Assembly (NCBI RefSeq): GCF_031769215.1
Contig: NW_026782276.1
Span: 1 to 64,000 of the forward strand
Direction: 5' to 3'
Length of the DNA: 64,000 bases
From: Ylistrum balloti
Lineage: Eukaryota
In this document: positions 29,601 to 49,956 of the stretch, in pieces
Layout: each line of letters starts with the position of its first letter
Position numbering within the stretch: the first letter of the stretch is position 1
Notes under the pieces: generated by a model
Database searches by the model: none
What the model saw: only the letters and a program-made list of their open reading frames with translations
Told to the model about the DNA's origin: nothing
Program-made: the position numbers and the translations under genes

Positions 29601-30789
29601 TTTTCTTAGGTACTTGGTTTTTAAACCTCATAGGTCATACATCTATAAGTTGAACAAATGAAAGATATACCATATACTGGCTGAAAAGTTACATACACTT
29701 GTAATTTACAGTGTTTCGTTTACAATGTGACCAACCTTTGTGTACGGATACTCATTATATATACATTATATATTTAAACATTAAACGGATATCTCCTTTT
29801 TTTTGTCTCGGTATCGACACATCTAAAGTTTCGTACCCTTAAATAGGAAAGTTTATTTTCATCCCTTCTGTTTTTTCCGTTTAATTATTTTCAATTCGTA
29901 ACAGTCGTTAAACATATTTACCAGCCAAACAGTGCGATATGATCGCAAAGTTGCGCGGTAGATTTAACCAAACTTGAAATTTATACAATTTATAGAGGTA
30001 AATATCTGCTACAAAGTTACGATCGGAATGATCATCAATGCACGTGATCATTTAATGTTTACGTCAAGTACAGACAGTTAACAACAGCGCACTATTAGGA
30101 TTTGCGATAACAAGAATTTACTGTTTAAAAAGTGACCGTGTTGTATTTATAATATAAATATAATATAAATGAACCGGTGGCTTTACAGTTATTCAATAAA
30201 ATACAACAAACAAGCAATAAGCTATAATAAAAAGATATACAAATTATATCGTTTGTTTGTTAATTGAATATGATTTTGTAAAGAAAAAACACGAGACTGT
30301 AAGCAATGCGTTTCTGTTCTCTTCGGCTTCTGCAGGCGGATGTTTATGTGTTGCAACTGGGTACGTAACATCATCAGTAAACATTAAAACATAACACGTC
30401 ATCTGTCAATATAAGAATGGAATTTGTTAACACTATTCATTCACCATATTGTGATAATGATAATGTGATTGAACTAGATTTCAGAAATTTGATAAACGAT
30501 CTTTTTTCATTTTTAAAATTGTAATCATGATATCTGTATTTAAATTTAAAAAAGAAAGATAAGAAATTCATCTTTTAGACACTGATGCACGTGTTTGTAA
30601 ACTCTGAATAATCTTTTTTGGCATTTTATGTACATTCATACATAATCGTAATTCATAATATGTTTGTCCCACATAAAATCACTATATTGTTTACCTACTA
30701 AATCATACCATATATGTTTAAAAATACGTTATATCTGACCTAATTCCTATATTTAAAAAGGCAGTAATTTCTACATTCTATTATGATCT

Positions 30790-31440
30790 TACAACTTGGT
30801 GTAATACATTTACAACATTCATGGCTTCAATATCGAATTGATATCACACCTTAGTTTAATACATTTACAACATTCGTGTCTCAATATCGAATTAATACAC
30901 CGTACATTGATGTAATACATTTACAACATTCGTGTCTCAATATCGAATTAATACCGTACATTGATGTAATACATTTACAACATTCGTGTCTCAATATCGA
31001 ATTAATACCGCACATTGATGTAATACATTTACAACATTCGTGTCTCAATATCGAATTAATACCGTACATTGATGTAATACATTTACAACATTCGTGTCTC
31101 AATATCGAATTAATACCGCACATTGATGTAATACATTTACAACATTCGTGTCTCAATATCGAATTAATACTGTACATTGATGTAATACATTTACAACGTT
31201 CGTGTCTCAATATCGAATTAATACCGTACATTGATGTAATACATTAACAACATTCGTGCCTCAATATCGAATTAATACCGTACATTGTTGTAATACATTT
31301 ACAGCATTTGTGCCCTAAATATCGAATTAATACCACACATTGGCGTGATACATTTACAGCATTCGTGCCCTAAATATCGAATTAATACCACACATTGGCG
31401 TGATACATTTACAGTATTCGTGATCTCGATATCGAATTTA
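30790..31440. repeat. 54-bp minisatellite, about 12 units
   Basis: Unit AATATCGAATTAATACCGTACATTGATGTAATACATTTACAACATTCGTGTCTC. Central units are near-identical and edge units are diverged. Confidence 0.95.
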
Positions 31441-32469
31441 GACTTACAGTTTACATTTCTATTTCTTTTCCATTTCCAAAAAAAACCCTCAGTTTTTCAC
31501 TGAATTTTTATGTGTAGTTTTCACATTTGAGGAAAAGCGATGAGGTACACTTATCTAAATTGTAAAACGTAAAAATAGTAAGATATTTCTGTCTTCGTTT
31601 TGAGAGCTTTAGGAGGTCTACCTAATTCGAATTTTCGTTTTTGTTATCGCATATAATGTATTACCCTTGTAGTATATTGTGAATTCCTCAAATAGAGTTA
31701 CAATTCCAGCATTTATGTCTTAGATTACTTTGTATTTTCATATCAGTTTCCGATCTTTTTCAGTTTTAAAAGAATACCAGATTGATACCTATCAAGAAAC
31801 CCCCGTCTAATTGTATTAGGCAACTCATAACAAGAATTAGGTCAAGTCTACAAAACTCTTACCAAATTTATGGTGAGAGAAAAGAAAAATATGAACTTAA
31901 GGAGTTGTTAGACAGGGGCAACATATAAAATAAACCAAGGTGTTTAAAACATGACAAGGAGTTTAGATATATTCGCTACAACAGATGTACAACGGCTTTA
32001 CATATTTCAAAACACCATGATAAACATATTGTTTCAGAGTTAAATTTGTAACTTGATAACATGTTATATATAGATCTGGCTTTGTAGTTGCTTAATCTTA
32101 ATGCTCAACAAAATTTAAGCATCGATGACATAATCGGGAGATCCACAGTAAAACATTATATATTATTTACAAAAAATGATAAAAAAATAAAAAAAACTAA
32201 TATGCACTTGTTTCTAAAAAACGGTAACAATGTGAGAGTTCCCAACTCAAACGATTCGATCTGTGTGTCATTTTGTTAATAGTGACCAGTGACAGAGACC
32301 TAACCAAGAAATATGTTGCATTTACATCAACACCGGATGACACTCCAGAGGAATTACATGGACACTCATGCTCTCTGTCATTTGTAACAAAATACGCATT
32401 TTTAAGTTCGATATCTGACAATTCCTTTTTCAAACAATGATAGAAAGCAAAGAGTTTCTGAAATTTCTT

Positions 32470-35400
32470 CTAACACAAACCGAACGATGTAGAAGACAGA
32501 GCATATATTTTGTTGATATCAAGATGTATCGGATCATGTCTGAATACCATCAACAGAGGCATTCCCTGTCCCATCATTCCATACCTCGCTGCTAATTTGG
32601 TTGCTGCGTTATTTTCTAATGGACTCGTGAAACCAACAACGCAACCCTTTGGAACTTCACTTGCAATTTTTAAAAATACTTCGTTAGCCACATACTCATT
32701 GTCCGCATAAAGTGGAGCGATTTGGAGACATGTGTCCTGGAACCTCAGAACTGCATATCCACAAAGTTTGCCATCTTTTACCGCGACATAGGTCTTTAAT
32801 TGGGGATTAGAAATCCAATTAATGATGTAAGCTTTCCGTGGAATTTTGTGAATCTGAGTGTCATACTGTATCACGGCTGATAATGTGGAGTGTTTTAAGG
32901 GATGGATGAGAACTTGTTCTTCGTGTTTATGCCTGGGATTTAGATCGACATGTTGTTCAATTCGCCCGCTATTGTACCAGGTGGTGTATGCTTGCGTCGT
33001 GTTACTTTTCGTAATCATGTTAACCTTTTCCTGCATGTGTGGCCAGATAAATCCAGCATAATTTCTGTCCGGAAATCGATTTATTGTCTTTGCAAGCTTA
33101 TATCCAACACTTGAAGATCTGTAATCTTTGTGGACAATCCATAACCCTGATACATAGAGATTATCCGTGAAGGACAATGATGAATAACATCCTGAAAACA
33201 ACACAAGTGATTGTAGCAAAGATATTGAATATTCTTTACAGATTTTATACACAAAGGAATGCTAAGCAATGTCAAAAATTTGTTTTTTTCAGACGCAGGT
33301 GTTAACATACATACCCCCAAATAAAGAATATCTATCCCTTTTTTCAATTAACATAAAAAACAGGACTATGTTGTTTCCGCTGAAGTCAGAAGGACGACGG
33401 TATTTCAAAGTTTTGTTTTTCTTTCATAGTAAAAAATAAAGAAGAAAATTTACAAAATAGTGAAAAATGATAGAAACGATCCGATACTGTATTTAGAAAT
33501 CGCTTAGAAAACGTCAACAATCAACAAAAGACAACACCAGAAATTAGTTTTTTATATCAAGTGGTGTCACGTGATATGCGCAATTGATGTTCCGAATGTC
33601 TCAGATAACTCTATATGTGGTTACCTGTTGCTAAATATCACTGTTGTTATATATCATATATTTGAAATGCAAATCTTTTTCATTAATATTTTTTTAAAAT
33701 CATCAATATTTACCAAAACAATTGTTTGCAGATAGCAGCTGTGAAATGTATTTCTGGGCCTAGGAGACATGTGATTTAGCCATCAAGTTAATAAGGGTGT
33801 AATGCCCTGAATAGATCGGCTTAGCAGGGAGAAAAACGCGAGAAATATATATTGCGCTCCACTTATGTTTTATTTTTGTTACATTGCTTATCACTTTTTC
33901 CAATCTTTGAGATAGCAAGAGGTAGACACTGCTTGTGGACTGTTTGCAGTTCCCGAGCTTTTTGCGTAAGCTTCATGCAACGTTTCAATTTATTAGAAAA
34001 GTGGCACAGTATAGGTTATACATATGTACTCTATAATTATCTGAAAACTCTTCCAGAAAGAGATATGGTAAGACAACTATCACCATTTTAGGCGCATTTT
34101 CTATCTAGAAAATCCAAAAGAGGATTGGAGTAAGTCAATTGACTTATTTGGATTGAGTTAGATTTACATATCGCTTTCTCCTTCGGAACACTTGGTCTTA
34201 TTCTCATTGTACGTTTTCAGTAGTTTCCGTGTAATCTTTCTTTAGTCTATATTTTCCTCACTTTTATTTGAATTTGAACTTAGATTATGATTATGTTGTC
34301 TTGTATCAGGAGACTTTCATTTTCTCTTCAATTTTTTATCTGTATTCACTGATTAAATCTGTGATATATTAACAATGCATTTAAGTACAAAAGAAACAGA
34401 TTTCATGAAACAACTCTTGGGGTAAAGCTTGAAATCTACTGACATTTATATTCCAATGTGCAGATGAGAGATTGCACAACGTTACACGATGCGATGTATA
34501 TATATTTAGGTTGGTCACTTGTAGATCTATCGGATCCACACTGTTTAGTTACACATGAATAGCCTTAGTGTACGGTAATCATTAAATGGTCTTCTCTTCA
34601 TGTCACATTAATGAATCATAGAAAATATCAAACCGTCAGAGAAAAACCTTTATTTTCATTACCTCTGTATTACTTTCATTTTTCATATATTTTGTCAACA
34701 AAAAATATATGCTGAGGTAAAATTGAAGTGTTGTGTTTTTACACGGGCGACCCAGTCGGTAGAGTGTTGGGACCTGTCACGTATATACCCGTATAGGTAA
34801 ACTTTTTGTTGCCCGAGACACCACTACTCGCCTCTTTCGACTGTGTGAAACTATATACGATAAGACTTATTAATGCAGGTCCAGTGTTACTTCAAAAAGG
34901 CAGAACTAAAATTATTTTATAACCACTGATCAGTTTCCATATTCATGTGATCGCTATTTAGTAATAACTTCACGAATTTTCGTTTCAAGTTTTAATTCGT
35001 AAAATTAGCCAACTGTTTTTACCAAACCGCGCGAAATGTGCGATGCTATCGCACAGTTGTGCGCATGATACTCCATAGCGCGAGTGTGCGCACGATGTAT
35101 GCAAGAAGGTTTTGTTGCGTTACGTGTTACCACAACTGTATCGATGATGAACCACGAATGTGTAAAATTTAGTGTAGATTGACTTTTTTATTTATGTATT
35201 ATTTATTTTGTTTCATTTTTGGGGTTCCCGATTATGTGGGACGCAAACATTATACTAATGATATAGAATACGTTTGCTCATTAGATAAAGAAGAGTACAT
35301 CAATCCAAAAATGATAAACCATTCGATAAGACATTTGTACACAATGTTACTGACAGTTACCGTTAACCTCAAACAGGGAGAATGCTGAGGTTCCGTCCTT

Positions 35401-36287
35401 TGGACGACTTACAGCAGAAATAAGAAATGATAATTTAAACAAAATTGATATCAAATTAGAGAAAATAAGGCCCTGGTGTAGTACACACAAACATGTGATT
35501 ATCTAACTTTAAAAGACGTCAATTTCAATGTCTCCACTAGGATACGAACACGTGACACTTGATTTACTTGTCTAAATCTATAAATAGTATCTTTCTAACC
35601 GAGTGGCATTTTCCGGTTAGTATTTTACCAATGCTACATATTCCTCCTGTAGGAAGTAACTCGTCTTGGAGGCAGGGTTACAGCGATGTTAGTGAAAATA
35701 ACGCTGTGTATATCATTCATTCTAGAGGTCATTATTACAACGGCGTCGCTAGGATTCGAACCCGGAACATCTGGTATTTAAGTCTGACGCTCAAAAGATC
35801 AAGTTGAAGGTCTCTCTAACCAAGCGGTAAGTACAATTTTACAAAAGTTACAATTACTTGTAAACTTTGTGTTTGTCATATTTGTAAAGTCATCAGAATA
35901 AATTCAAACTTACCAATGATTTCTCTGTCTACCGTCTCAGCCACAACGAAATCCCGTGGATTAGTTTTAAATGCGCAGTCTAAGTATGCTTTCTCCATAA
36001 TCCACTTTTCCTCATCAAGTAGTTGATTAACTTTCGTTAAATCTCGCTTGTTCATTGAACGAATCCTGAAGTGGACATTTGATAAAGCGCGTGTCCTGTA
36101 ATAATGAAAAAAACCCGTTGCAAACATAATATCATTCATATCCCAATAAATGCGATGGAATAGTTGATATAAATAGATAAAATGATTGCATATGTTTGTG
36201 TAACAAAGCAACTTACTGCCTAACGATTCTTCGTATTGTCTCTGCAGATGCAATGGTCAGGATTTGCTGGTTTAATATCGGTATCAT
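32470..36287 (-). CDS. GNAT copy A, a YitH/holothin-acyltransferase-like two-domain N-acyltransferase of 324 aa. Exons 36287-36217, 36095-35914, 33191-32470.
   Basis: Intact spliced ORF (71+182+722 nt). FRIRSM..DL..V..L..EKW, FVVAE...EIIG, GLWIV..YRSSSVG, YDxxxH..PR..YI..W, GYAVLR, IAPLYAD, NxxA..LA..YG. Confidence 0.85.
35480..35830 (-). mobile_element. Dimeric tRNA-derived SINE-like element in GNAT-A intron 2; related copies at ~38870-39160 (+) and ~47280-47620 (+)
   Basis: Two 'GTTCG(A/T)ATCCTAG' B-box units about 200 bp apart in each copy. Confidence 0.55.
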
Positions 36288-38378
36288 TTTGCCGTCAGAT
36301 GACGCAAAGGTATGCTCTGCCTTGCCGGATTGTACAAAGTATACATCCGGGTAAAATCGTTCCTGTATATTTTAAATGCACCCGTATTGAAGCAGTCTAT
36401 GCAGTTAGGTGGACACGTTATTTAAATACAGCTACCCCTTTTCGGTGAGGTGTAATAACGCATTGCTAAATTCTAAGGTCCTTATTTTCTATATACATGT
36501 ATATGTAGAAAGCATTTATCTAAATTCCATTTTAATTATTCTCAGGTATGTCGTTTAAAATAAAACTCAACACCTTTGCACTTCTTTGAGGTAAACTGAG
36601 ACTTTTCTGTCACCGACATTCTAATTTGTAAGACACATGAGCAATATAATCTTTCACGTTCTTTGTAACTCTGTAGGTATTGTCGAACAAAATTGTTTTT
36701 GTAAGTTCGGGACATCAATCTGCCCACATCTGATATTTATCAATGTCTTGTTTACTCTTCTGAAGGCTACGATTGTAACTAAAGTCAACAAGAATTAAAA
36801 AGCATTGACACGGATGTCTGCATCTTTTTGTTTGTTTTTGTTTCTTTGTTTGGTAACACAGGGACGCATTTGAAAAATGTCGCTGCATAATCATAGTAAT
36901 TGTTTTGAGTATATAGTAAATATATAGTGGTGTTATAATACAAATGTGATTTCAACATGACTATTCTTTTTTTATCGTGATTTTTTAAATTTTTTAGTAA
37001 GAATTTTGATGATAAAGTCTTCAAAACCACAAGGGTCAAATGTCCCATGATCACTTTTCTAACAACTACTTGAACATGGGTTATGATACTTGTGTAGTAT
37101 CTTACTGAAGAATTTGAATTTAAACCTTGTTTTAACGAACCAGCAGTTTATGTAAGCTTCAAAACAGAAGACCGATTCAGGCCCATTCGGTCTGTAGATG
37201 TTAATCTTTCTCCCTCAACCGGTTTCATCGAACTTTTCTAACCGCATTTGTCTGTTTAATGCCCCGAAGGATACAGCAACGCAGGTAAAAACAGTCGTCG
37301 AAAATGATGCAGGCACATGTTTTCTAATGCGCACCTGTTTCACCCTCTGCTTCATTCCAGATACCAAACATTCAAGGTGGTATAGAAATCAGGTTCAAGG
37401 CGTATTCTTTTCACTTCTTGGTCATTCATAGTAGAGACGTAGTGATCAGAAACATAAGCGTGCCTTACATACGGAATTTCGTTGATATATATAAGATACT
37501 ACATCACAATTCGGTTCCAATGACTGTAAATGAGTCTCAAACAAACACCCACACATTCGGATCACTTTTGCTTTGTATTACCTCCCTTCAAGAGCATGCA
37601 TTTTTATGACTAGCTCTTCAGCTGATCGTCACTCATCAAAGCTTCTTCGGCCAACGTTTGATCGAATTGGCCTAATTTCCATTCCGCTGACAGAAAACTC
37701 AATCGCACGACCAGAAACGTTATGTGTGGGATTATACAACTGAAATAACCATATTCATAAACCATCACATCTATTTAAAATTTTATATAATTTTGTGGAG
37801 CACCATCAAGGCATAGTAGATATACTATGTATAGAGATGTACACAAGTAATTGTTTTATATAACATTTTTACTCGAAGAGAACATGTTTTTATCTAATTC
37901 TAGAGAAAATAACTAACGAGAGTGAAATGAATATCATATATAACAATCATGTGTGACACGTTTCTACCACGTGTTTCCAGTATATTGTTAGCTCTTTAGT
38001 TCAAAGTTAATTAAGGACGATTAAACATATGAGAACAACTCTTACAAGGACTTCTTTCAATTCACACTAAAATCCAATAGTCCAATATGCGTTAGCATGC
38101 TATTTTATTTCTGAAGTTACAAACATATCTTGTTAACATATCTGTACCACGCAATTAAATACCATTCTTACGAAACCCATTGTCATCTTGAAACATTGTG
38201 ATGTTTGTAGCTGTAAATAGGCAACGTGTCCATTTAACGACATTGACTGCTACAACTCAGGTGTACTTCATATATATACATAACGACCTTACCTGGAGAC
38301 ATACATCGTACGATCTAGAAAGCCAAAACATACCTTAGTGTTTGTTGTATGATCACAACTGCATCACCTGACTGCAAA

Positions 38379-40358
38379 ATGATGGCGATACTAAAACAAC
38401 AAATCCTGACCATTGCATCTGCACGAGTAATACTAAAAATTGAAAGGCAGTAAGTTGATTATTTCACACACGCATGCAACCATTTTATCTATTAATCATT
38501 ACGTTTGAATTTCATTGTCTAATAGATAATACTATGTTTGTTTTAAGTTGTTTTCATTTTTACAGGACACGCGCTTTTTCAAATGTCCACTTCAGGATTC
38601 GTTCAATGAAAGAGCAAGATTTAACGAGAGTTAATCAATTACTTAATGACGAAAAGTGGATTATGGAAAAAGCATACTTAGACTGCGCATTTAAAACTAA
38701 TCCACGGGATTTCGTTGTGGCTGAGACGGTAGACAGAGAAATCATTGGTAAGTTTGAATTTTATCCTGATGACTTTACAAATATGGGAGAAAAATCAGCT
38801 GATCAGTAATTGGAACGCTGGTGAAATGCTAGTCGCTAATTACCGCACAGTTTGAATAATCTTATCTTTATTTTGATTGGATAAGTGTAAGACTAGTAAA
38901 CAAGAGGCTCCGGGTTCGAATCCTAGCGGAGACATTGGAATAATGACCTCAGGAATAGTACTTCGCTTTACCTAAACTAGCATGGCTTTAACCACTGGAA
39001 GCTCGAGGACGAGTCATTTTTTGGCAGAAGGGGTATTAAATCTGAAATAATACTAGCCACTAAATGCTACTCGGCTAGAAAGATGATTTCTTCAGCTCGA
39101 TCGACTGAGCGTTAGATAAGTATACCAAGGGTCATGGATTCGAAACCTAGGTGGCCGGAGTTCAATAAGGCGACAAACCGGTATATACCTTAATGATATC
39201 TTTCGAGCATATAATGTATGCTTTGTAGTAGAAAACTATCTAATTTTGACTTTACTTTAATTTGTGCTTGTTTGGCAATTTTCATCTTTGTATTTGCCTT
39301 TTTTATGATTTGAAGGAAGAATCTACGAAGATATAAATGTCATAATGTTCAATGAACAAGTAAAGATTTTGTCGACGCCGTCTAAATTCTCGGAAGAAAA
39401 GTTTTGAAAATATCAAAATAATTTGCTTCGAAAAATAATAAGGAAATTGGCACTGTCAAGTTCAGATTGAAAATAAATTTAAAACAAAGAGGAAAATATT
39501 CTTTAATTTGGGTAATTGTAATATAAATCTGGTTCTTAAAAATAATCAGCTTTAAGGCAACGCTATGCATTCTTCTATGTATGATATTTTAAAGAGCATT
39601 TAAATACATTGATACAATCCCTTGTGTTATTTACAGGATTTCATGGACTACTTTCCCTCACGGATAAACTCGACGTGTTAGGATTATGGTTTGTCCAGAA
39701 GGAGTACAGATCTTCTGGTGTTGGATGTAAATTTGTCGAGAGAATAAACCAGGTGTCAAACAGAAATTTTGGTACATTTATTTGGCCACACATGCAGGAA
39801 AAGGTTAACATGATAACGAAAAGCAACACGACGCAAGCATACACCACCTGGTACAATAGCGGGCGAATTGAACAACATGTCGATCTAAATCCCTGGCACC
39901 AGCCTGAAGAACAAGTTCTTATCCGTCCCTTAAAACACTCCACATTATCAGCCGTGATACAGTATGACACTCAGATTCACAAAGTTCCACGAAAAGCTTA
40001 CATCATTAATTGGATTTCTAATCCCCAATCAAAGACCTATGTTGCGGTAAAAGATGGCAAACTTTGTGGATATGCAGTTCTGAGGTTCCAGGACACATGT
40101 CTCCAAATCGCTCCACTTTATGCGAACAATGAGTATGTGGCTAACAAATTATTTTCAAAAATTGCAAGTGAAGTCCCTAAGGGTTGCGTTGTTGGTTTTA
40201 CGAGTCCATTAGACAATAATGCAGCAACCAAATTAGCAGCTAGGTATGGAATGATGGGACAGGGAATGCCTCTGTTGATGGTATTCAGACATGATCCGAT
40301 ACATCTTGATATAAAAAAAATATATGCTCTATCTTCTACATCGTTCGGTTTGTGTTAG
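38379..40358 (+). CDS. GNAT copy B, 324 aa. Exons 38379-38449, 38566-38747, 39637-40358.
   Basis: Intact, with the same exon sizes and phases as copy A and canonical splice sites. Motif A reads YRSSGVG. Confidence 0.87.
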
Positions 40359-42393
40359 AAGAAATTTCAGAAACTCTTTGCTTTCTGTCATTATTTGATA
40401 AAAGGAATTGTCAGGCATCGAACTTAAAAATGCGTTTTTTGTTACTGTAAGGATGACAGAGTGCAATAAGTGTCCATGTAATTCCTCTGGAGTGTTATCC
40501 GGTGTTGATGTAAATGCAACATATTTCCTGGTTAGGTCACTGGTCACTATTGACGAAATGGCTCACAGATCGAATCGTTTGAGGTGGGAACTGGCACATT
40601 GTTACCGGTTTTAAGAAACAAGTGCATTTTCGTTTTTTTTTGTAAATAATGTATAGTGTTTTACTGTGCTTCTGCCGATTATGTCATTAATACTTTAATT
40701 TTGTGGAGCGTTACGAATATGAAAATTCAAAGCCAGATCCATATCTAACATGTTATCAAGTTACAAATTTAGCGAGCTCTGAGACAATATGTATATCATG
40801 GTGTTTTGAAATATGTAAAAGTCGTTGTACATCTGTTTCAGCTAATACATCTAAACTCCTTGTAATGTCTTTAAACTCCTTGGTAAATTTTATATGTTGC
40901 CCCTGCCTAACTACCTCTTGAGTTCATATTTTTCTTTTCCCTCTCCAATTTGGTTTCTCTCACCAGAAATTTGGTAAGATTTTTGTAGACTTGACCTAAT
41001 TCTTGTTATGAGTTGCCTAATAAAATAAGATGTTTTTTTTTCTTTAGATGTATCAATCTGGTATTCTTTTCCAAACTGAAAAAAAGATCGGAAACTGATA
41101 TGAAAATACAAAGTAATCTAAAACAGCAATGCTGGAATTGTAGCTCTATTTGAGGAATTTACAATATACTACAAGGGTAAAACAAAAAAGTATGCGATAA
41201 CAAAAACATAAATTCGAGTTAGGTAGACCTCCTTAAGATCTCAAAACAAAGACACCAATATCATACTATTTTTACGTTTTTACAATTCAGGTCATTGTAT
41301 CTCATCGCATTTCCTCAAATGTGAAAACTACACATAAAACTGAGGTTTTTATTTTGGAAATGGAAAAGAAATAGAAATGTAAACTCTAACTCTGAATTCG
41401 ATATTGAGGCCACGAATGCTGTAAATGTTTTACGCCAACGTGCGGTATTTATTTGATATTGAGACAAGAATATTGTGAAAGTATAACAACAAGGTGCGAT
41501 ATTAATGCCATATTAAGACACGAATATTGTAATTGTATAACAACAAGGTGCGATATTAATGTCATATTGAGACCACGAATGTCGTAAATGTATAACACCA
41601 AGGTGCGGTATTAATTCGATACTGAGACACGAATATTGTAAATGTATAACGCCATGGTGGGATATCAATTCGATATTGAGGCTACAAATGTTGTAAATGT
41701 TTAACACCAAGGTATGCATTAATTCAATATAGAGAAAAGATTGTTGTCAATGTATTAAACCGAGGTGTGATATCAATTCGATATTGAAGCCATGAATGTT
41801 GTAAATGTATAACACCAAGGTGTAAGATCATAACAGAATGAAGAATTAACTGCCTTTTCAGGTATATGAAATACGTCTGATATAACGTTTTGTTTTAAAC
41901 ATACATGGTTTGTTTTAGTACGTAAATAATGTAGTGATTTTATGTGGGACAAACATATTATGAATAACGATTGTGTATGAATGTAAATAAAAGGCAAATA
42001 AAAATTATTCAGGGTTCTTAAAGTTTACAAACACATGCATCTGTGTCTTAAATATGAATTCCTCGCCTTTCTTAATACAGATATCATGATTACAATGTAA
42101 AAAAATTTAAAAAGGATTGTTTATCAAATTTCTGAAATCTAGTTCAAGTACACTATGATTATTACAACATGAATGAATAGTGTTAACAAATTCCATTCTT
42201 ATATTGACAGATGACGTTTTATGTTTTAATGTTTACTGATGATGTTACGTACCCAGTTGCGACACATAAACATCCGCCTGAAGAAGCCGAAGAGAACAGA
42301 AATGCCTTGCTAACAGTCTCGTGTTTTTTCCTTACAAAATCATATTCAGTTTACAAACAAACGATAGCATTTGGTTTTTTTTTAAAATATAGC
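39780..42393 (+). repeat. Right outer arm of the GNAT palindrome, inverted match to ~30218-33050
   Basis: Continuous reverse-complement homology of the exon-3 tail, the 3' flank, the minisatellite and the 'gttgcaactgggtacgtaacatcatcag' block. Confidence 0.9.
41395..41830. repeat. Diverged inverted counterpart of the 54-bp minisatellite
   Basis: Recurrent 'attcgatattgag..cacgaat.ttgtaaatgtat' units. Confidence 0.8.
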
Positions 42394-42405
42394 TAGATAA
42401 ATAAA

Positions 42406-42506
42406 GACAGGGAATGCCTCTTTTGATGGTATTCACACATGATCCAATACATCTTGATATCAACAAAATATATGCACTGTCTTCTACATCGTTCGGTTTG
42501 TTATAA
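42406..42506 (+). pseudogene. GNAT remnant D: last ~33 codons plus a 3' UTR-like tail to ~42690
   Basis: QGMPLLMVFTHDPIHLDINKIYALSSTSFGLL*. Confidence 0.85.
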
Positions 42507-43569
42507 GCAATATAAGTAGAAATATCATATAGGAAACTCTTCGCTTTCTGTCATTGATGTAAAAGGAACTGTCCGATATCGAATTCAGACATTTGCATTT
42601 TGTTACTAAAAAATGACAGAGGGCATTTCAGTTAGCATCTATGTATTTCCTGTTGAGTATCATCCGGTGTTGATGCAGGTGCAAAAATGTTTCTTAGGTG
42701 TCAAGGTCAAGGTCACAATTACTATTTGTAGAAGTATTTCAAAAATTTCACTTCATTTTGCATAATCCTCTGAAACGATGAATACTTACTATCATCAAAA
42801 CTGCTCAAACATTGACCTATTTGAGATGGGAGCTGACACATTGGTTCCATTTGCGAGAAACAAGTAAATGTGTGTAAAATTCCTATAATAATTGAATAAT
42901 TTAAAGAACGCTATGGTTCGGTTTGTGACTTTGGGACTGCTTGAAAGTATCCAATATACAGTGGTTTCTTGTCTTTCTGCCTGTTTCTTATCGCTTTTAT
43001 CTAAAACAAACTGATCATTTATGAATTAGGAACGAAAATAACAATAACATATTTTGGTATTGACAATGAACGACTCACCTGAAATTTTACTTTTGACAAA
43101 TGGTATTTAGTCTATTTGATTTGCATGCAGAGATATGATCAAATGATAACTGGAGTTCATCCTTATTGTATACACTGTAAGAACGTTTTAAGTTTCGACG
43201 ATGAAGCAGAAGACGCTCAACATTCCGAAGCACCTTGTCTTTTTCAGTGGTTTTCGTGTAAATCTTTGTTTTGTTCATACGTGCCTTCTGTGGGTATTAT
43301 TTTATCTCCTTTTGTCATTCTCTATTATGACTTATTGATATATCTGTGTTGTTAACATACATCTCATCTTTCATGCATATCATAACAATTGGCAGGTATC
43401 CAGAACTGTCAATACAGTTACAGTTTGAATCATATCACATATGTGATATCAGCTTTTATTCATTTTGCAAACGTTTGCGAAACAATTTTTTTAATACATA
43501 CTAATCGTGCAAGGGGTCTTATTGTGAGAGAAAACCGGATAACCCGTGAAAACCAAAATGGTCGTGCAG

Positions 43570-43655
43570 ATAACCCCTTACTTACGTCCGTAATAGAAAT
43601 CGAACCCCGGATGGTGAGGTGAAAGGGAGTGCGTTACCAAAGCGCCACCCGATCA
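43570..43655 (-). mobile_element. tRNA-derived SINE head; copies at ~45020-45110 and ~52480-52560
   Basis: GGTGGCGCTTTGGTAACGCACTCCCTTTCACC...GGGTTCGATTT...GGACGTAAG. Confidence 0.55.
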
Positions 43656-43789
43656 CCCAACATTTCACATAAGTACATAATGACCTATATATCAGACATT
43701 TTAAGGTCATTAGAAATAGGACATGCTCCTCTTTATATCATCGACCATTTGATCTGTAAGGTGTGTCAAAAACATGTGACCAATATAAT

Positions 43790-44023
43790 CTGTCATGCAA
43801 GTAAATGACATACTTGCGAAACCCAGTATCATATTGAAGCATTGCATGATGTTTGCTGCTACAGCACAGGTGTACTTTATATATATACATAACGATCTTA
43901 CCTGGATATATACTTTGTACGATTTGAAAGTCAAATCATACCTTAGTGTCTGTTGTATATCACAACTGCATCACGTGACGGCAAAATCATGGCAATACTA
44001 ATTAAACAAATCCTGAACATTGC
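43790..44023 (+). pseudogene. GNAT remnant E: promoter plus truncated exon 1
   Basis: MAILIKQILNIA, then a jump into a second copy of the 42990 module. Confidence 0.75.
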
Positions 44024-45479
44024 TTATCGCTTTTATCTAAAACAAGCTGATCAGTTTTGAAATAGGAACGAAGAAAATAATAACTCATTTTTGTCAAGAT
44101 AATAAATGACTCACTTGAAATTTTCCTTTTGACAGATAATATTTAGTCCATATGATTTGTATACAGAGATATGATTAAATGGTTTCTAGAGTTCATCTTA
44201 TTATGCAATGTATGATCATTTTACTTTTAGATGATGAAGCATAAGACGCCCAACATTCCGAAACACCTTGTCTTTTTCAGTGATTTTCGTGTAAATCTTT
44301 GTTTTGTTCATATGCATTTTCAGTTGGTATTCTTTTATCTCCTTTTGTCATATTCTATTATGACTTTTTTCTGCTTGTGTTTGGGTATAGGTTCAAAGTA
44401 TTTTCCCCTGTTACATTAAGCAGAAAATGGGGTTGTACCTATCGACTGCGTTGCAAATCTGCTGAGAATCAGTCACCCGACATTACATTGAGTTTCAGTA
44501 AATATGTTCAATTTGAAATTGTGAAAGAAATAAAGCAACAATACTTACAATACTTAGAGCTGATTATTCTGATCAAAAAGGGTTTGATATCAGCATTTCA
44601 TCATAATAATCTTCATTAAGACTGAAAATGTTCAAAGTAAGGTAAAATGTCAAAAAAATAAAGACTTACACGAAGACTCTCGGAAAATGTACAAGTTTTT
44701 TCGTTGAAACCCGTCAAGTCAATCTCGATCAATATTCAGATACAATATTCTGCTGACACATTGATATCTCTGTCGGATGTCATCAAATTGCAAATTAAAT
44801 TCAAAGATATTCACCTTTTTCTGTTTATTTATCATTTCAATGAGTTTCGAAAACATAACACAAGTTGTGTAATTAATGTAATTTCATCTTTCATGTGTAG
44901 CATAACAATTGTCTATTTGCAGGTATCCTTAACTGTAAATAAAGTTACATCTTGAATATTTAGAAACTGTCACTTAGAGTGACAACAAATATTTCGCATA
45001 GGTGATATCAACATGGTAGGGTAGATGACCTCTTACTTACGTCCATTAAGGGAGTCGAACACCAGGTGGAGAGGTGAAAGGCGAGTGCGTTACCAAAGCA
45101 TCTTCCGACCAACCAACATTTCACATAAGTACATAATGACCTATATATGAGACACTTTTAAGGTCATTAGAAAAAGGCGTGCTCTTTTTTATCATCGCCC
45201 ATTTGATATGTGAGGTGTGTCAAAAAAATGTGAGCAATATAATCTGTCATGAAAGTAAATAATATTCTTACGAAACCCAGTATCATATTAAAACATTGCG
45301 TGATGCTTGTAGCTGTACATAGGCAACGTGTCCATCCAACGACATTGACTGCTACAACACAGGTGCACTTTATATATATACATAACGACCTTACCTGGAT
45401 ATATATTTTGTACGATCTAGAAAGCCAAAACATACCTTAGTGTCTGTTGTATATTACAATTGCATCACCTGACGGCAAA

Positions 45480-48400
45480 ATGATGGCGATACTAAAACAA
45501 CAAATCCTTAACATTGCATCTGCACGAGTAATACGAAAAATTGATTATTTCACACACGCATGCATCCACTTTTTCTATTAATCATTACTTTTGAATTTCT
45601 TTTTCAAATAGATAATACTATGTTTGTTTTAAGTTGTTTTCATTTTTACAGGACACGCGCTTTTTCAAATGTCCACTTCAGGATTCGTTCAATGAAAGAG
45701 CAGGATTTAACGAGAGTTAATCATTTACTTGATGACAAAAAGTGGATTATGGAGAAAGCATACTTAGACTGTGCATTTAAAACTAATCCACGGGATTTCG
45801 ATGTGGCTGAGACGGTAGACAGAGAAATAATTGGTAAGCACTAATTGACCACTATAAATATGAAATAGTTCTTTTGGTTTGCTACATCATTTGGTAATGG
45901 TAATTAATTTTTAATTCAGCAATTTGATTCCAAACTTCGGACTTAGGGACAGAACCCGAAAAGGGAAAAATAATACAATATTTTGCTTCAAAACGCTACT
46001 CCTTTTTTAATGTTTGAATTTGGTTTAAAACAACATTGATGGTGGGAAATTATTTCTTAAATTCAGAAATGTTATTCGAACCCTAGGGACTTGGGGATGG
46101 GGCCCAAAAATGGGAAAATTGTCAAAATATTGCTTCAAAACACTACTACTCCTTTTTAATTCTTGAATGGATTTCAACAAAATTAATTTTGAAACGTCAT
46201 CGAGCAAGTTTTTTTTTCTCAATGCAGAAATTTGATTCGACCTCTAGGGATGGGTCCCAAAAGCGGAAATTATTCAATATTTTGCTTCAAAACACCACCT
46301 CTTTTTAATGATTGCATTGATTCAAACAAATTTGGCCCGAAACAGCATTGAGAGTAGAGAAGGATTTCTGATCTTCAGAAAGAAGTTTTAACCTGTAAGG
46401 AAGCTAGTCGATATTTTTCTTCAAAATGCTGCTCTTTCTTAATTTTGGAATGGTTTTCTACCTAATTCAGACACAAACATCACTAGGAATGGGAGATCAT
46501 TTCTTAAATTCCGAAAGTTGATTCGACTCCTGGTAAATAGGAATGACCTTGATTTGCTTGAAAGGTCACAGGGATCAAATATGTTAAAATCTTTAAATGA
46601 CTTCTCAACAACCAAAACGCAATGAATGATCCTAGACCTGTAGCCTGCTAGGATGAAAGGTTACCAACTTTGTTAATATGAATGACATTAACCCTCTTTC
46701 AAGGTCACGGGTATGCAATGTATCAAAATGACTTCTTCTCAGTAACTAATAGATAAAGGGTCTCAATATTGGGTCTATAGCATGTTTTTCAACATGCAAT
46801 ACGTCCGGAGTAATGGCAATTAAGTAGTGCATGTATAAAGAATATGATTGCATAACATGTCTCGATGAACAAACAATGTCTTCTATGTAAGCTGTAGAGT
46901 AATTGAGCAATTTCTTTTAGGCCTTTTCTGCCTCTTTCATAAATAGGTTTTTATAGACAGATGACTGTTAAGGCCCATGGGCCTGTTGTTAGCAAATATG
47001 TCAAAGAAAAAAAATAAATGAAGCCGTGCTCCTGAATTCATCAAAGACAAGTCATGCCTGATTTTTTTAGGTATATATGATCTATTTCTAAAAAGCTTGG
47101 AATAATCAGTTTCAAAAGCATTGCACAACACTAATCTATCTTCAAAATTGGTAAAGAACACAAGTTGTATTGATAAAATCGCTTGTATTGTTTCCAGGAT
47201 TTCGTTGTCCCTTTTGCCTCACGGGTAATCTAGTATTAGGATTATGGCTTGTCCATAGCAAAATAGTATTCGCACGTTACCGCTAAGTTAGAAAGACTTT
47301 CAGCTTGATAGTTTGAGCGTTAAAGTAGAAAACCAGATGTTCCAGGTTCGAATCCTAGCGTAGCCGTTGTAATTATGACCTCTAGAATGAAACATATACG
47401 CAGCGCTACTTTCACTAACATCGCTGTAGTCCTACCTCGAAGACGAGTTACTTCCTGGAGGAGGAGTATGTAGCACTGGTAAAATACTAACCGGAAAATG
47501 CCGCTCTGTTAGAAAGATACTATTTATAGATTTAGACAAGTTAATCAAGTGCCACGTGTTCGAATCCTAGTGGAGGCACTGAAATAAATAATGACGTCTT
47601 TTAAAGTTAGATAATCACAAGTTGGTGTTCAATTTTTTTTTATATTATTATTTCTTATTTCTGCCGTAAATCTACAAGTGACCAACCTAAATATTCACGG
47701 CTTAATTAGGGAATACTCGAAGTGGTATTCTTATATGTTTAAAAAATAAATAAACCCTATCCCACACTTATTTAAAAGTCATTTCGGAATGTATGTCAAC
47801 CACGTAAGAATCGCACATGTGTGCGATAAAACCGCACAACGCGCTCACGAATGTGCGACAACTCATTTCGTCCAATTTCCCTATCGTGCGCACATCGGAT
47901 CGTGTAACGTTGTGCAGTCCCTCATCTGTAAATTGGAATATACATGTCAGTAGATATGGATGTCATGACCTCATATGTATAAAAACACATGCCATATGTC
48001 AAATTTCAATCTGTAACCCACATGTTGTTTCTCGAAATCTGTTTCTTTTGTACTTCAATGCATCCTTAATATATCACAGATTTAATCAGTGAATACAGAT
48101 CAAAGCTTTGAAGAGAAAATGAAAGTCTCCTAATACAAGAAAATACCTATAAGTCAACATCATCATAATCCAAATTCAAATTCAAATAAAAGTGAGGAAA
48201 ATATAGATTAAAGAAAAATTACACGGAAACTACTGAAAACGTACAAAGAGAATATGACCAAGTGTTCCGGAGGAGAAAGCGATATGTAAATCTAACTCAA
48301 TCCAAATAAGTCAATTGACTCACTCCAATCCTCTTTTGGATTTTCTAGACAGAAAATGCGCCTAAAATGGTGATAGTTGTCTTACCATATCTCCTTCTGG

Positions 48401-49956
48401 AAGAGTTTTCAGATAATTATAGAGTACATATGTATAACCTATACTGTACAAATTTTCTAATGAATTGAAACGTTGCATGAAGCTTACGCAAAAAGCTCGG
48501 AAACTGCAAACAGTCCACCAGCAGTGTCTATCACTTGCTATCTCAAAGATTAAAAAAAAAAATAGCATTGTAACAGAATTAAACATAAGCCGAACGTAAT
48601 ATATGTTTCTCCCGTTTTACCCCATGCTAAGCCGTTCTATTCAGGGCACTACACCCTTATTAACTGGATGGCTAAATTACATGTCTCCTACGCCCATAAA
48701 TACATTTCACAACAACTATCTAGAAAAATTGTGTTTTGGTAAATATTGATGATTTAAAAAATGAAATTTGCATTTCAAATTTATTATATAAAACGACACT
48801 GATATTTAGCAACAGGGAACCACATATAGAGTTAACTGTGATATTTCTGATATCACGTGACACAACGTGATATAAATACTAATAAATAGTGTTGTGTTTT
48901 GTTGATTGTTAACATTGTCTAAGCGATTTCTAAATACAGTATCGGATCGTTTCTATCATTTTTCACTATTTTGTAATTTTTCTTCTTTATTTTTCACTAT
49001 GAAAGAAAAACAAAACTATGACATACCGTCGTCCTTCTGACTTCAGCGGAAACAAAATAGGCCTGTTTTTATGTTAATTAAAAAAAGAGATAGATACTCT
49101 TTATTTGGGGGTATGTATATTAACATCTGCGTCTGAAAAAAAACAACTATTGAACATTGCTTAGTATTCATCTGTGTATAAAATCTGTATAGAATATTCA
49201 ATTTCATTGCTACAATCACTTGTGTTGTTTTCAGGATGTTATTCATCATTGTCCTTCACGGATAATCTCTATGTATCAGGGTTATGGATTGTCCACAAAG
49301 ATTACAGATCTTCAAGTGTTGGATATAAGCTTGCAAAGACAATAAATCGATTTCCGGACAGAAATTATGCTGGATTTATCTGGCCACACATGCAGGACAA
49401 GATTAACATGATTACGAAAAGCAACACGACGCAAGCATACACCACCTGGTACAATAGCGGGCGGATTGAACAACATGTCGATCTAAATCCCAGGCATAAA
49501 CACGAAGAACAAGTTCTCATCCATCCCTTAAAACACTCCACATTGTCAGCTGTGATACAGTATGACACTCAGATTCACAAAGTTCCACGAAAAGCTTACA
49601 TCATTAATTGGATTTCTAATCCCCAATCAAAGACCTATGTTGCGGTAAAAGATGGCAAACTTTGTGGATATGCAGTTCTGAGGTTCCAGGACACATGCCT
49701 CCAAATCGCTCCACTTTATGCGAACAATGAGTATGTAGCTAACGAAGTATTTTTAAAAATTGCAAGTGAAGTTCCTAAGGGTTGCGTTGTTGGTTTCACG
49801 AGTCCATTAGAAAATAACGCAGCAACCAAATTAGCAGCGAGGTATGGAATGATGGGACAAGGAATGCCTCTGTTGATGGTATTCAGACACGATCCGATAC
49901 ATCTTGATATCAACAAAATATATGCTCTATCTTCTACATCGTTTGGTTTGTGTTAA
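45480..49956 (+). CDS. GNAT copy C. Exon 1 starts at 45480 with its donor deleted; exon 2 45652-45833; exon 3 49235-49956. Functional status uncertain.
   Basis: Exons 2 and 3 are open and AG/GT-bounded. A 15-bp deletion relative to copy B removes GAAAGGCAGTAAGTT. Confidence 0.7.
45920..47000 (-). mobile_element. Helentron-associated non-autonomous (HINE-like) element in GNAT-C intron 2
   Basis: Internal tandem units anchored by 'cttcaaaac.ctactcc' and a terminal palindrome AGGCCCATGGGCCT at ~46971. Absent from the A and B introns. Confidence 0.6.

What the first reader, a model, noticed from the sequence alone, without database searches (positions are those of the whole stretch)
39637..39780. 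Sharply bounded hypervariable cassette over the GNAT active-site motif
In the first 47 residues of exon 3, B differs from A/C at 24 positions by my count. Over the remaining ~193 residues, A and B differ at only about 12, with an abrupt switch at FIWP. The variable block covers beta-4 and motif A: B has canonical RxxGxG (YRSSGVG) while A/C have YRSSSVG. Homogenised scaffolds with a protected specificity cassette would be a conversion-driven way of diversifying enzymes, more typical of immune loci than metabolic genes. This is the best candidate for a novel system in the window.
Basis: partly seen in the sequence, partly recalled or inferred. Interest (0 to 1): 0.72.

Follow-up and report, generated by a model that had tools for sequence, protein, structure and literature searches.

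The report
Gene-conversion mosaic in scallop acyltransferase paralogs
Three neighbouring copies of a scallop acyltransferase gene have been partly overwritten by one another, and the "hypervariable cassette" is the coding end of an old stretch that escaped the overwriting. It is a clear but ordinary example of gene conversion between duplicated genes, not a new diversity-generating system.

Summary
In exon 3, gene B (39637-40358, +) differs from A (33191-32470, -) and C (49235-49956, +) at 24 of the first 47 residues and 12 of the remaining 193. That is 41/147 nt against 27/575 nt. The breakpoint lies at about 39775-39815 (max chi-square 75.6, permutation p<=0.0002).

It is not a cassette bounded on both sides in the DNA.
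- B's divergence continues at the same level (31-34%) through intron 2; the 5' edge is only the exon edge.
- Silent sites are as diverged as the intron (dS 0.57 against 0.13 in the rest).
- dN/dS is 0.5-0.7, not above 1.
- Only two cassette states exist. A and C are identical there.
- B's cassette shows 0-2 differences per 147 nt in four other individuals.
- The window holds no donor cassettes.

Nearest neighbours change along the gene: B~C at the 5' end, A~C in intron 2 and the cassette, all three alike in exon 2 and the rest of exon 3, and A~B in the 3' flank. This is interlocus gene conversion and partial duplication in a young cluster.

Whether selection keeps the cassette unconverted is open (about 25%). 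That idea is itself a known concept, the "peak of divergence". The scan also noted conversion-limited tracts among channel paralogs elsewhere in this genome. The finding is a new member of a known kind, of modest interest.

The parts
39637..39783 (+). B-type 'cassette': first 147 nt of exon 3 of gene B (residues 85-131 of P0001). It encodes the end of beta-3, beta-4, the motif-A loop, alpha-3 and beta-5.
   Evidence: It is 28% different from A/C at the DNA level, with dS 0.57 and dN 0.30. It is 64% identical in protein to the Pecten maximus relative P0007.
39775..39815 (+). Breakpoint interval where B switches from about 28% to about 5% divergence from A/C (the FIWP codons).
   Evidence: Max chi-square falls at 39775 with p<=0.0002. 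The last dense difference is at 39782 and the next at 39815.
38750..39636 (+). Intron 2 of B, the non-coding continuation of the divergent block.
   Evidence: Its last 160 nt are 31-34% different from A and C. Its first 330 nt are 33% different from A. The middle part cannot be aligned.
39784..40358 (+). Homogenised remainder of B exon 3: end of the N-terminal GNAT domain, the linker, and the C-terminal Acetyltransf_18 domain.
   Evidence: It is 4.7-5.2% different from A/C, with dS 0.13-0.16 and omega 0.15-0.2. Pfam PF18014 matches with E=2.6e-18.
39894..39925 (+). Second small unconverted patch in the reference B haplotype, with 8 B-unique sites in 32 nt. Contigs of three other individuals carry the A/C states here.
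38382..38450 (+). Gene B exon 1.
   Evidence: tblastn of P0001 residues 1-23 gives 100% identity. The donor is CAG|GTAAGT.
38564..38749 (+). Gene B exon 2, homogenised with A and C.
   Evidence: It is 4.8% different from A with dS 0.054. The A-B near-identity runs about 38 nt into intron 2.
33045..33191 (-). A-type cassette (gene A = P0002 / XP_060074740), the derived state.
   Evidence: It is identical to C's cassette (0/147). It carries the only exceptions in the family alignment at the otherwise invariant G87 and G129.
32470..33191 (-). Gene A exon 3.
35912..36097 (-). Gene A exon 2.
36216..36287 (-). Gene A exon 1. A and B lie head to head, about 2.1 kb apart.
49235..49956 (+). Gene C exon 3 (P0017 / XP_060074742). 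The cassette at 49235-49381 is identical to A's.
45650..45835 (+). Gene C exon 2. B-C homology (90%) ends about 3 nt past this exon.
45483..45545 (+). Relic of the ancestral exon 1 of C. A gap of about 16 columns against B in the alignment removes the GT donor.
42778..42864 (+). Alternative first exon used in the annotated C protein. It lies inside a relic of another copy's 3' UTR.
   Evidence: tblastn of P0017 residues 1-29 gives 100% identity. The stretch is homologous to the 3' UTRs of B (40545-40622) and A.
47152..47255 (+). Decayed relic of an exon-3 acceptor plus the first 60-85 nt of a cassette, inside intron 2 of C. It marks C as a chimera.
   Evidence: 75-78% identical to both the B and A cassettes, then truncated.
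48003..49234 (+). Distal intron 2 of C, which is A-like (about 91%).
   Evidence: 32458-34435 matches 49968-48003 at 91.4%.
40359..42394 (+). 3' flank of B. It is homologous to the 3' flank of A (30220-32469, inverted) at about 84-90%. C has no counterpart.
42406..42721 (+). Truncated relic of a further gene copy: the last ~100 nt of exon 3 plus a 3' UTR.

Best explanation
The window comes from the scallop Ylistrum balloti and carries a young cluster of three tandem-GNAT acyltransferase genes annotated as 'holothin acyltransferase-like'. Each has an N-terminal GNAT domain and a C-terminal Acetyltransf_18 domain. A is on the minus strand and lies head to head with B; C follows on the plus strand.

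Two old sequence lineages are present, A-like and B-like, with about 0.45-0.6 substitutions per neutral site between them. They have been patched together by partial duplications and non-allelic gene conversion.

Shown:
- The nearest neighbour changes along the gene: B~C in the promoter, exon 1 and intron 1; A~C in distal intron 2 and the cassette; all three alike in exon 2 and the rest of exon 3; A~B in more than 2 kb of 3' flank.
- The 147-nt cassette is the exonic end of one unconverted block that also includes intron 2.
- Its silent sites are as diverged as that intron.
- The FIWP switch is the 5' end of a tract that continues for more than 2.6 kb, through the rest of exon 3 and into non-coding DNA, at 5-11% divergence.

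Inferred:
- Conversion is continuing. Other individuals carry A/C states at nearly every B-unique site downstream of the switch, and A and C are identical across the cassette.
- The B-versus-A/C cassette difference persists mainly because a 28%-diverged block that is flanked by alignable sequence on one side only is a poor substrate for heteroduplex formation. This barrier reinforces itself.
- B keeps the ancestral-like cassette. The A/C lineage accumulated about 2.5 times more changes at both silent and replacement sites, under relaxed constraint (omega about 0.7).

No dedicated diversification mechanism is involved.
For: - Identity of the genes: (XP_060074740, XP_060074741 and XP_060074742, Ylistrum balloti). 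The tandem-GNAT fold (VipF, 3ddd, MshD, Eis-like) is.
- Segment divergences, A-B: 5' flank 0.37, exon 1 + intron 1 0.26, exon 2 0.048, intron 2 0.33-0.34, cassette 0.28, rest of exon 3 0.047, 3' flank 0.107.
- Segment divergences, B-C: exon 1 + intron 1 0.06, cassette 0.28, rest 0.052, 3' flank unrelated.
- Segment divergences, A-C: exon 1 + intron 1 0.29, last 160 nt of intron 2 0.095, cassette 0, rest 0.033.
- Site patterns, counted as A=C / B=C / A=B: 5' part 11/69/9, end of intron 2 43/8/5, cassette 41/0/0.
- Codon measures: cassette dS 0.57 and dN 0.30; rest dS 0.13 and dN 0.027; exon 2 dS 0.054. The silent-site excess in the cassette gives Fisher p=0.0014.
- Breakpoint: p<=0.0002.
- Polarisation with Pecten P0007: 25 nt changes on the A/C branch against 10 on the B branch (p=0.017). 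These are 7 silent + 18 replacement against 3 + 7, giving omega about 0.7 on both branches, not different from 1.
- Introns of Ylistrum and Pecten do not align, while A and B introns align at 67-74%. The lineage split is therefore younger than the species split.
- Contigs of four other individuals from two studies run from B's intron 2 through the cassette and past 39783, so the junction is not an assembly chimera. In them the cassette has 0-2 differences, none towards the A/C state. Downstream they carry A/C states at 39894-39920 and 40146-40313.
- There are no extra cassettes in the window apart from a truncated relic.
- C is a chimera with a relic exon-3 start in its intron and a recruited first exon.
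Against: - In the mature mRNA the cassette is flanked on both sides by homogenised coding sequence (exon 2 and the rest of exon 3). It has stayed unconverted in all five B haplotypes seen, although sequence immediately downstream is exchanged. A similarly diverged 32-nt patch (39894-39925) was converted in other individuals. This is what selection against conversion would also produce.
- dN/dS in the cassette (0.5-0.7) is three to four times the background seen in the rest of exon 3 (0.13-0.2). The A/C state changes two otherwise invariant glycines.
- The downstream 'A/C states' in other individuals may partly reflect collapse of paralogs in de Bruijn contigs (depth 27-30 against 12-18).
- The cassette alone cannot resolve whether A and B cassettes are sisters.
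Confidence: 0.68

Rival explanations
1. Selection-maintained island of divergence. After duplication, the A/C-type and B-type cassettes acquired different properties in the acyl-CoA-binding core of the N-terminal GNAT domain, for example in acyl-donor preference or activity. Conversion events that would mix them are removed by selection, while the rest of the coding sequence evolves in concert.
For: - Coding sequence on both sides is homogenised (exon 2 dS 0.054, rest dS 0.13) while the cassette is not.
- The B cassette is retained in the reference and four other individuals, although adjacent sequence is exchanged.
- A and C share an identical cassette (0/164 nt, where about 5 differences are expected at the exon rate), so the cassette can be converted between like types.
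- Omega is 0.5-0.7 against 0.13-0.2 in the rest of exon 3.
- A/C alone change G87 and G129.
- The three polymorphisms seen in the B cassette are all replacement changes (and my own codon reading).
Against: - The divergent block includes the whole of intron 2 at the same level. It is not a peak centred on codons with homogenised introns on either side, as in the opsin case described in PMC3924837.
- Silent sites carry the excess (p=0.0014), and omega is not above 1.
- The N/S ratio in the cassette does not differ significantly from the rest (p=0.078) or from the B-Pecten comparison (p=0.20).
- The A/C branch is longer at silent sites too.
- The 3' boundary is abrupt, as at the end of a single tract.
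- No functional data exist.
Confidence: 0.25
2. Ectopic replacement. One cassette type, together with the adjacent intron, was pasted in from a more distant paralogue elsewhere in the genome, so the block is foreign rather than old.
For: The abrupt 3' boundary and the 28% divergence would fit a pasted-in tract. Other family members exist in Ylistrum (P0008, P0011).
Against: - The other Ylistrum paralogues are only 32-47% identical to either cassette, which is further than A and B are from each other.
- B's cassette is the ancestral-like one (64% identical to Pecten P0007).
- It is continuous with an intron, exon 1 and promoter that show the same old divergence from A.
- There are no donors in the window.
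Confidence: 0.04
3. Assembly artefact: a chimeric join of paralogues in the reference contig.
For: Multi-copy clusters with 95% identical stretches are prone to mis-joins.
Against: Independent contigs of four individuals from two studies span B intron 2, the cassette and the breakpoint (38700-39940, 38732-39812, 38700-40330).
Confidence: 0.02

Closest known systems
'Peak of divergence' between duplicated genes undergoing gene conversion (Innan 2003 on RHCE/RHD; the Teshima-Innan signature in red/green opsin exon 5), as reviewed in PMC3924837
   Same: Neighbouring paralogues are kept alike over most of their length by non-allelic conversion, while a short coding stretch stays strongly diverged.
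   Different: In the opsin case the flanking introns are homogenised and the peak sits on known functional codons. Here the adjacent intron is as diverged as the cassette, the 3' edge is a step rather than a decay, and no functional difference is known.
Frog ATP1A1 paralogues (bioRxiv 10.1101/2020.08.04.234435) and Tigriopus GOT1 paralogues (PMC3728101)
   Same: These are tandem duplicates of ordinary housekeeping or metabolic genes. Conversion homogenises most of the gene and islands of difference persist. This shows that the pattern is not peculiar to immune loci.
   Different: In the frog case, according to the abstract, one paralogue evolved resistance to toad toxins, so the persisting differences have a demonstrated function. 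The scallop case has only sequence statistics, and they are equivocal.
Arm-to-arm conversion in inverted duplications or palindromes
   Same: A and B are head-to-head inverted copies (30220-36435 against 42394-38207), with arm identity varying in blocks.
   Different: The arms are only 74-95% identical and of unequal length, and a third, direct copy (C) takes part.
Tandem-GNAT acyltransferases (Pfam Acetyltransf_1 + Acetyltransf_18; structures 3ddd, VipF 7wx7/6wqb, MshD 1ozp, Eis)
   Same: The two-GNAT fold is predicted with pTM 0.70, and Foldseek E-values reach 6e-12. The motif-A loop lies in the N-terminal domain.
   Different: Sequence identity to any solved structure is 8-15%. The substrate of the mollusc family is unknown. 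The name 'holothin acyltransferase-like' is the annotation source's label and was not tested here.
Cassette-based diversity generators (chicken immunoglobulin pseudo-V conversion, lamprey VLR, antigenic variation)
   Same: Only the use of gene conversion.
   Different: There is no array of silent donors, only two states, and no somatic or population hypervariability.

Membership tests
GNAT superfamily, two-domain YitH-like architecture (Acetyltransf_1 + Acetyltransf_18) | C-terminal Acetyltransf_18 domain above the Pfam gathering score | tested here: met
   PF18014 scores 62-66 bits against a cut-off of 22.7 in A, B and C.
GNAT superfamily, two-domain YitH-like architecture (Acetyltransf_1 + Acetyltransf_18) | N-terminal GNAT fold with a beta-4 / motif-A loop / alpha-3 element | tested here: met
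   The AlphaFold model shows beta-4 at 95-103, the loop, and alpha-3 at 112-121. The profile matches GNAT 3d8p over residues 72-144. Foldseek finds tandem GNATs. Pfam GNAT models score only 16-20 bits on the N-domain alone, below threshold.
GNAT superfamily, two-domain YitH-like architecture (Acetyltransf_1 + Acetyltransf_18) | Acyl-CoA-dependent transferase activity | not testable with these tools
   This needs an enzyme assay.
Paralogues evolving in concert by non-allelic gene conversion | Silent and non-coding divergence much lower in some segments than in adjacent ones, with sharp breakpoints | tested here: met
   dS is 0.05-0.13 in the homogenised segments against 0.45-0.6 elsewhere. The breakpoint has p<=0.0002.
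Paralogues evolving in concert by non-allelic gene conversion | Different segments support different nearest neighbours | tested here: met
   The supported pairs are (B,C) at the 5' end, (A,C) in intron 2 and the cassette, and (A,B) in the 3' flank.
Paralogues evolving in concert by non-allelic gene conversion | Conversion tracts segregating in the population | tested here: inconclusive
   Other individuals carry A/C states at the B-unique sites 39894-39920 and 40146-40313. These are short-read de Bruijn contigs, and some have doubled depth, so paralogue collapse cannot be excluded.
Selection-maintained peak of divergence (Teshima-Innan signature) | Divergence peak centred on coding sites, with homogenised neutral sequence on both sides | tested here: not met
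   Intron 2 immediately 5' of the cassette is 31-34% diverged, the same as the cassette. Only the 3' side and the distant exon 2 are homogenised.
Selection-maintained peak of divergence (Teshima-Innan signature) | Excess of replacement over silent change, or a demonstrated functional difference | tested here: inconclusive
   Omega is 0.5-0.7, which is raised against 0.13-0.2 in the rest of exon 3 but not above 1. Fisher p is 0.078. No functional data exist.
Cassette-type diversity-generating locus | Multiple donor cassettes and many variant states | tested here: not met
   There are three cassettes in two states plus one truncated relic. Each of four individuals shows 0-2 differences per 147 nt.

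The most novel reading that the evidence does not exclude
The cassette difference is actively protected by selection. After duplication, the A/C lineage remodelled the acyl-CoA-binding core of the N-terminal GNAT domain (beta-4, motif-A loop, alpha-3, beta-5, including two otherwise invariant glycines). This gave a different acyl-donor preference or a regulatory, non-catalytic role. The cluster now keeps two enzyme types on a shared, conversion-homogenised scaffold. It would be an enzyme counterpart of the opsin and RH cases, in a mollusc family whose substrate is unknown.
Probability: 0.25. Interest if true: 0.5.

Novelty: new member of a known kind. Interest (0 to 1): 0.3.

Why it matters
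The locus is a clean, well-delimited example of mosaic evolution by non-allelic gene conversion and partial duplication in a bivalve. It has an inverted pair, a chimeric third copy with a recruited first exon, and possibly segregating conversion tracts. It could serve population-genetic work on conversion tract lengths and homology thresholds in molluscs. It also warns against reading local paralogue divergence as hypermutation or positive selection without checking silent sites and introns. If the minority reading is right, it would point to the residues that tune the cofactor site in an uncharacterised animal family of tandem GNAT enzymes.

Tried and rejected
- Hypermutation or positive selection confined to the cassette is rejected. 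Silent sites carry the excess and omega is below 1.
- A both-sided cassette boundary in the DNA is rejected, because intron 2 is equally diverged.
- A donor-cassette array is rejected. Sensitive blastn and tblastn of both cassettes against the window found only the three genes and one truncated relic.
- An assembly chimera is rejected by independent contigs.
- A donor among other Ylistrum paralogues is rejected, since P0008 and P0011 are too distant.
- 'Canonical against non-canonical motif A' as a functional discriminator is rejected, because that position is variable across the family.
- N-domain Pfam scores of A and B are almost equal, 18.2 against 19.7 bits.
- Dating the cassette split against the species split from the cassette alone was inconclusive. 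No four-taxon topology was rejected, with AU p between 0.25 and 0.8. It was settled indirectly by intron alignability.
- Mapping the 24 variable residues onto the pocket was not possible, because model coordinates are not exposed to scripts. By secondary structure, the changes fall in every element of the block: beta-3 four, loop two, beta-4 three, motif-A loop three, alpha-3 five, loop four, beta-5 three. This count was derived.
- GARD, RDP and codeml are not installed. They were replaced by max chi-square with permutations, site-pattern counts, Nei-Gojobori estimates and parsimony polarisation.
- A literature search for 'holothin acyltransferase' found nothing.
Exons were searched by reference, and whole-protein steps used the database entries P0001, P0002 and P0017.
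- The large representative-protein search was not used, because nothing here rested on an absence of relatives.
Full report
**What is there.** The window is from the scallop Ylistrum balloti. The word search returned the window's own proteins, annotated as 'holothin acyltransferase-like'.
- Gene A is on the minus strand: exon 1 36287-36216, exon 2 36097-35912, exon 3 33191-32470. It is P0002 / XP_060074740.
- Gene B is on the plus strand: exons 38382-38450, 38564-38749 and 39637-40358. It is P0001 / XP_060074741.
- Gene C is on the plus strand: exon 2 45650-45835 and exon 3 49235-49956. It is P0017 / XP_060074742.
- Coordinates come from tblastn and splice-site inspection.
- A and B lie head to head as an inverted duplication (30220-36435 against 42394-38207). 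C follows B.
- Each protein has a weakly scoring N-terminal GNAT domain and a strong C-terminal Acetyltransf_18 domain.
- An AlphaFold model of B (pLDDT 74, pTM 0.70) matches tandem-GNAT structures such as 3ddd, VipF, MshD and Eis.
- I sent no spliced model joined by me to any search tool. Exons were searched by reference, and whole-protein steps used the database entries.

**Checking the observation.**
- B differs from A at 24 of exon-3 residues 2-47 and at 12 of the remaining 193.
- At the DNA level this is 41/147 against 27/575.
- The maximum chi-square breakpoint falls at exon nt 139 (window 39775) for both A-B and B-C. Its value (75.6 and 69.7) is far beyond anything in 5000 permutations.
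- B has YRSSGVG and A/C have YRSSSVG.
- In the model the block (residues 85-131) covers the end of beta-3, beta-4, the motif-A loop, alpha-3 and beta-5.

**Why it is not a bounded hypervariable cassette.**
- The 5' edge is only the exon edge. B's last 160 nt of intron 2 are 31-34% different from A and C, its first 330 nt are 33% different from A, and the middle does not align.
- The excess divergence is present at silent sites. Cassette dS is 0.57 against 0.13 in the rest (Fisher p=0.0014). This matches the intron (about 0.45 after correction).
- dN/dS is 0.52 overall and about 0.7 on each branch when polarised with the Pecten maximus relative P0007. It is not above 1, and it does not differ significantly from the rest (p=0.078).
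- There are only two states, because A and C are identical over the cassette (0/147).
- Contigs of four other individuals from two studies show 0-2 differences in B's cassette, none towards the A/C state.
- The window holds no further cassettes except a truncated, decayed relic at about 47152-47255 inside intron 2 of C.

**What the pattern is.** Divergence and site patterns show that the nearest neighbour changes along the gene.

| Segment | Closest pair | Figures |
|---|---|---|
| Promoter, exon 1, intron 1 | B~C | 6% apart; A 26-29% away; 69 B=C sites against 11 and 9 |
| Exon 2 | all three alike | 4-7% apart; A-B dS 0.054 |
| Distal intron 2 and cassette | A~C | 0-9.5% apart; B 28-34% away; 84 A=C sites against 8 and 5 |
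| Rest of exon 3 | all three alike | 3-5% apart |
| 3' flank | A~B | 10.7% apart over more than 2 kb; C unrelated |

- The A-B near-identity at exon 2 runs about 38 nt into intron 2.
- For A against B, the FIWP switch is the 5' end of a tract longer than 2.6 kb. It runs through the rest of exon 3 into non-coding DNA at 5-11% divergence. Upstream of the switch everything except exon 2 is old.
- C is a chimera. Its 5' part is B-like and ends a few bases past exon 2. It carries a relic exon-3 start in its intron, followed by A-like intron and exon 3.
- C's ancestral exon-1 donor is deleted. The annotated protein starts in a recruited exon at 42778-42864, inside the 3' UTR relic of yet another copy.
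- Debris of further copies lies at 42406-42721 and 43856-44023.

**Age and direction.**
- Between Ylistrum and Pecten only exons align, whereas A and B introns align at 67-74%. The two lineages therefore split after the species did. The cassette alone cannot resolve this.
- B's cassette is the conservative one. It is 64% identical to P0007, against 49% to its neighbour A.
- BLAST aligns B's whole exon 3 to the Pecten gene but drops A's cassette.
- Polarised changes are 25 on the A/C branch against 10 on the B branch (p=0.017). The excess is at silent as well as replacement sites.
- A/C alone change two otherwise invariant glycines, G87 and G129.

**Is conversion continuing?**
- The rest of exon 3 is patchy. 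The reference B has a second small old patch at 39894-39925, with 8 B-unique sites in 32 nt (p<0.0002).
- Contigs of three other individuals carry A/C states at seven of those eight sites. They also carry A/C states at nearly all B-unique sites between 40146 and 40313, mixed with A-only, C-only and novel variants.
- This suggests segregating conversion tracts. The contigs are short-read de Bruijn assemblies, however, and some have doubled depth, so paralogue collapse is not excluded.
- The identity of A and C across about 164 nt, where about 5 differences are expected at the exon rate, points to a recent A-C exchange that included the cassette.

**Mechanism and rivals.**
- Best reading (0.68): this is a mosaic made by partial duplications and non-allelic conversion. 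The cassette is the exonic end of an unconverted block. It persists because a 28%-diverged block with alignable sequence on one side only is a poor conversion substrate.
- Main rival (0.25): selection removes conversions that mix the two cassette types.
  - In its favour: coding sequence on both sides is homogenised, the B cassette is retained in all five haplotypes, omega is raised, and conserved glycines are changed.
  - Against it: the known signature is a peak on coding sites with homogenised flanking introns (PMC3924837), and that signature is not met. The statistics are equivocal.
- An ectopic donor (0.04) and an assembly artefact (0.02) are essentially excluded.

**Comparison and novelty.**
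- Homogenised paralogues with persisting islands of difference are well described. Examples are RHCE/RHD and the opsins (PMC3924837), frog ATP1A1 (bioRxiv 10.1101/2020.08.04.234435) and the metabolic enzyme GOT1 in a copepod (PMC3728101).
- The pattern is therefore not specific to immune loci, and this case is a new member of a known kind.
This fits an active conversion regime in this species.
- By established GNAT knowledge, the block encodes the acyl-CoA-binding core rather than the acceptor-specificity loops. That makes 'specificity cassette' a less natural label, although acyl-donor preference could be affected.

**Limits.**
- GARD, RDP and codeml were not available.
- Only one reads call was allowed, so the A and C cassettes were not surveyed in the population.
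- No RNA runs were found, so expression is untested.

Noticed in passing
window 11201-18476: Two 99%-identical repeats of about 1.3 kb (11201-12474 and 17063-18476) flank a G+C-richer interior. On the minus strand the interior has ORFs matching integrase (H2C2 and rve domains) and reverse transcriptase/RNase H. This is a young LTR retroelement, and its ORFs are split or overlapping. It was only observed.
   Followed up: partly
window 30791-31366 and 41411-41790: Minisatellites with a 54-bp unit lie in the homologous 3' flanks of A and B. Copy numbers differ between the two arms.
   Followed up: no
window 42778-42864 and 45483-45545: Gene C lost the donor site of its ancestral exon 1 through a gap of about 16 alignment columns against B. 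The annotated protein XP_060074742 starts instead in an exon recruited from the 3' UTR relic of a dead copy about 2.8 kb upstream. The protein therefore has a new N-terminus in place of the basic, helical leader of A and B.
   Followed up: partly
window 42406-42721, 42984-44369, 43856-44023: Debris of at least one further gene copy lies between B and C. It comprises the end of exon 3 plus a 3' UTR, repeated promoter and exon-1 fragments, and internal duplications.
   Followed up: partly
L002:5880-6044 (Pecten maximus LR736850.1): A second copy of exon 2 of the Pecten relative P0007 (96% at protein level) lies about 4 kb upstream of the gene. Partial duplications of this family therefore also occur in Pecten. 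No full tandem paralogue was seen within 10 kb of P0003 or P0007.
   Followed up: no
window 39784 (individual X5): One individual, filed under a different organism label, has G>T at the second base of the codon for the conserved Trp of FIWP. It also has two replacement variants in the cassette (39675, 39729). Each is supported by a single contig only.
   Followed up: no
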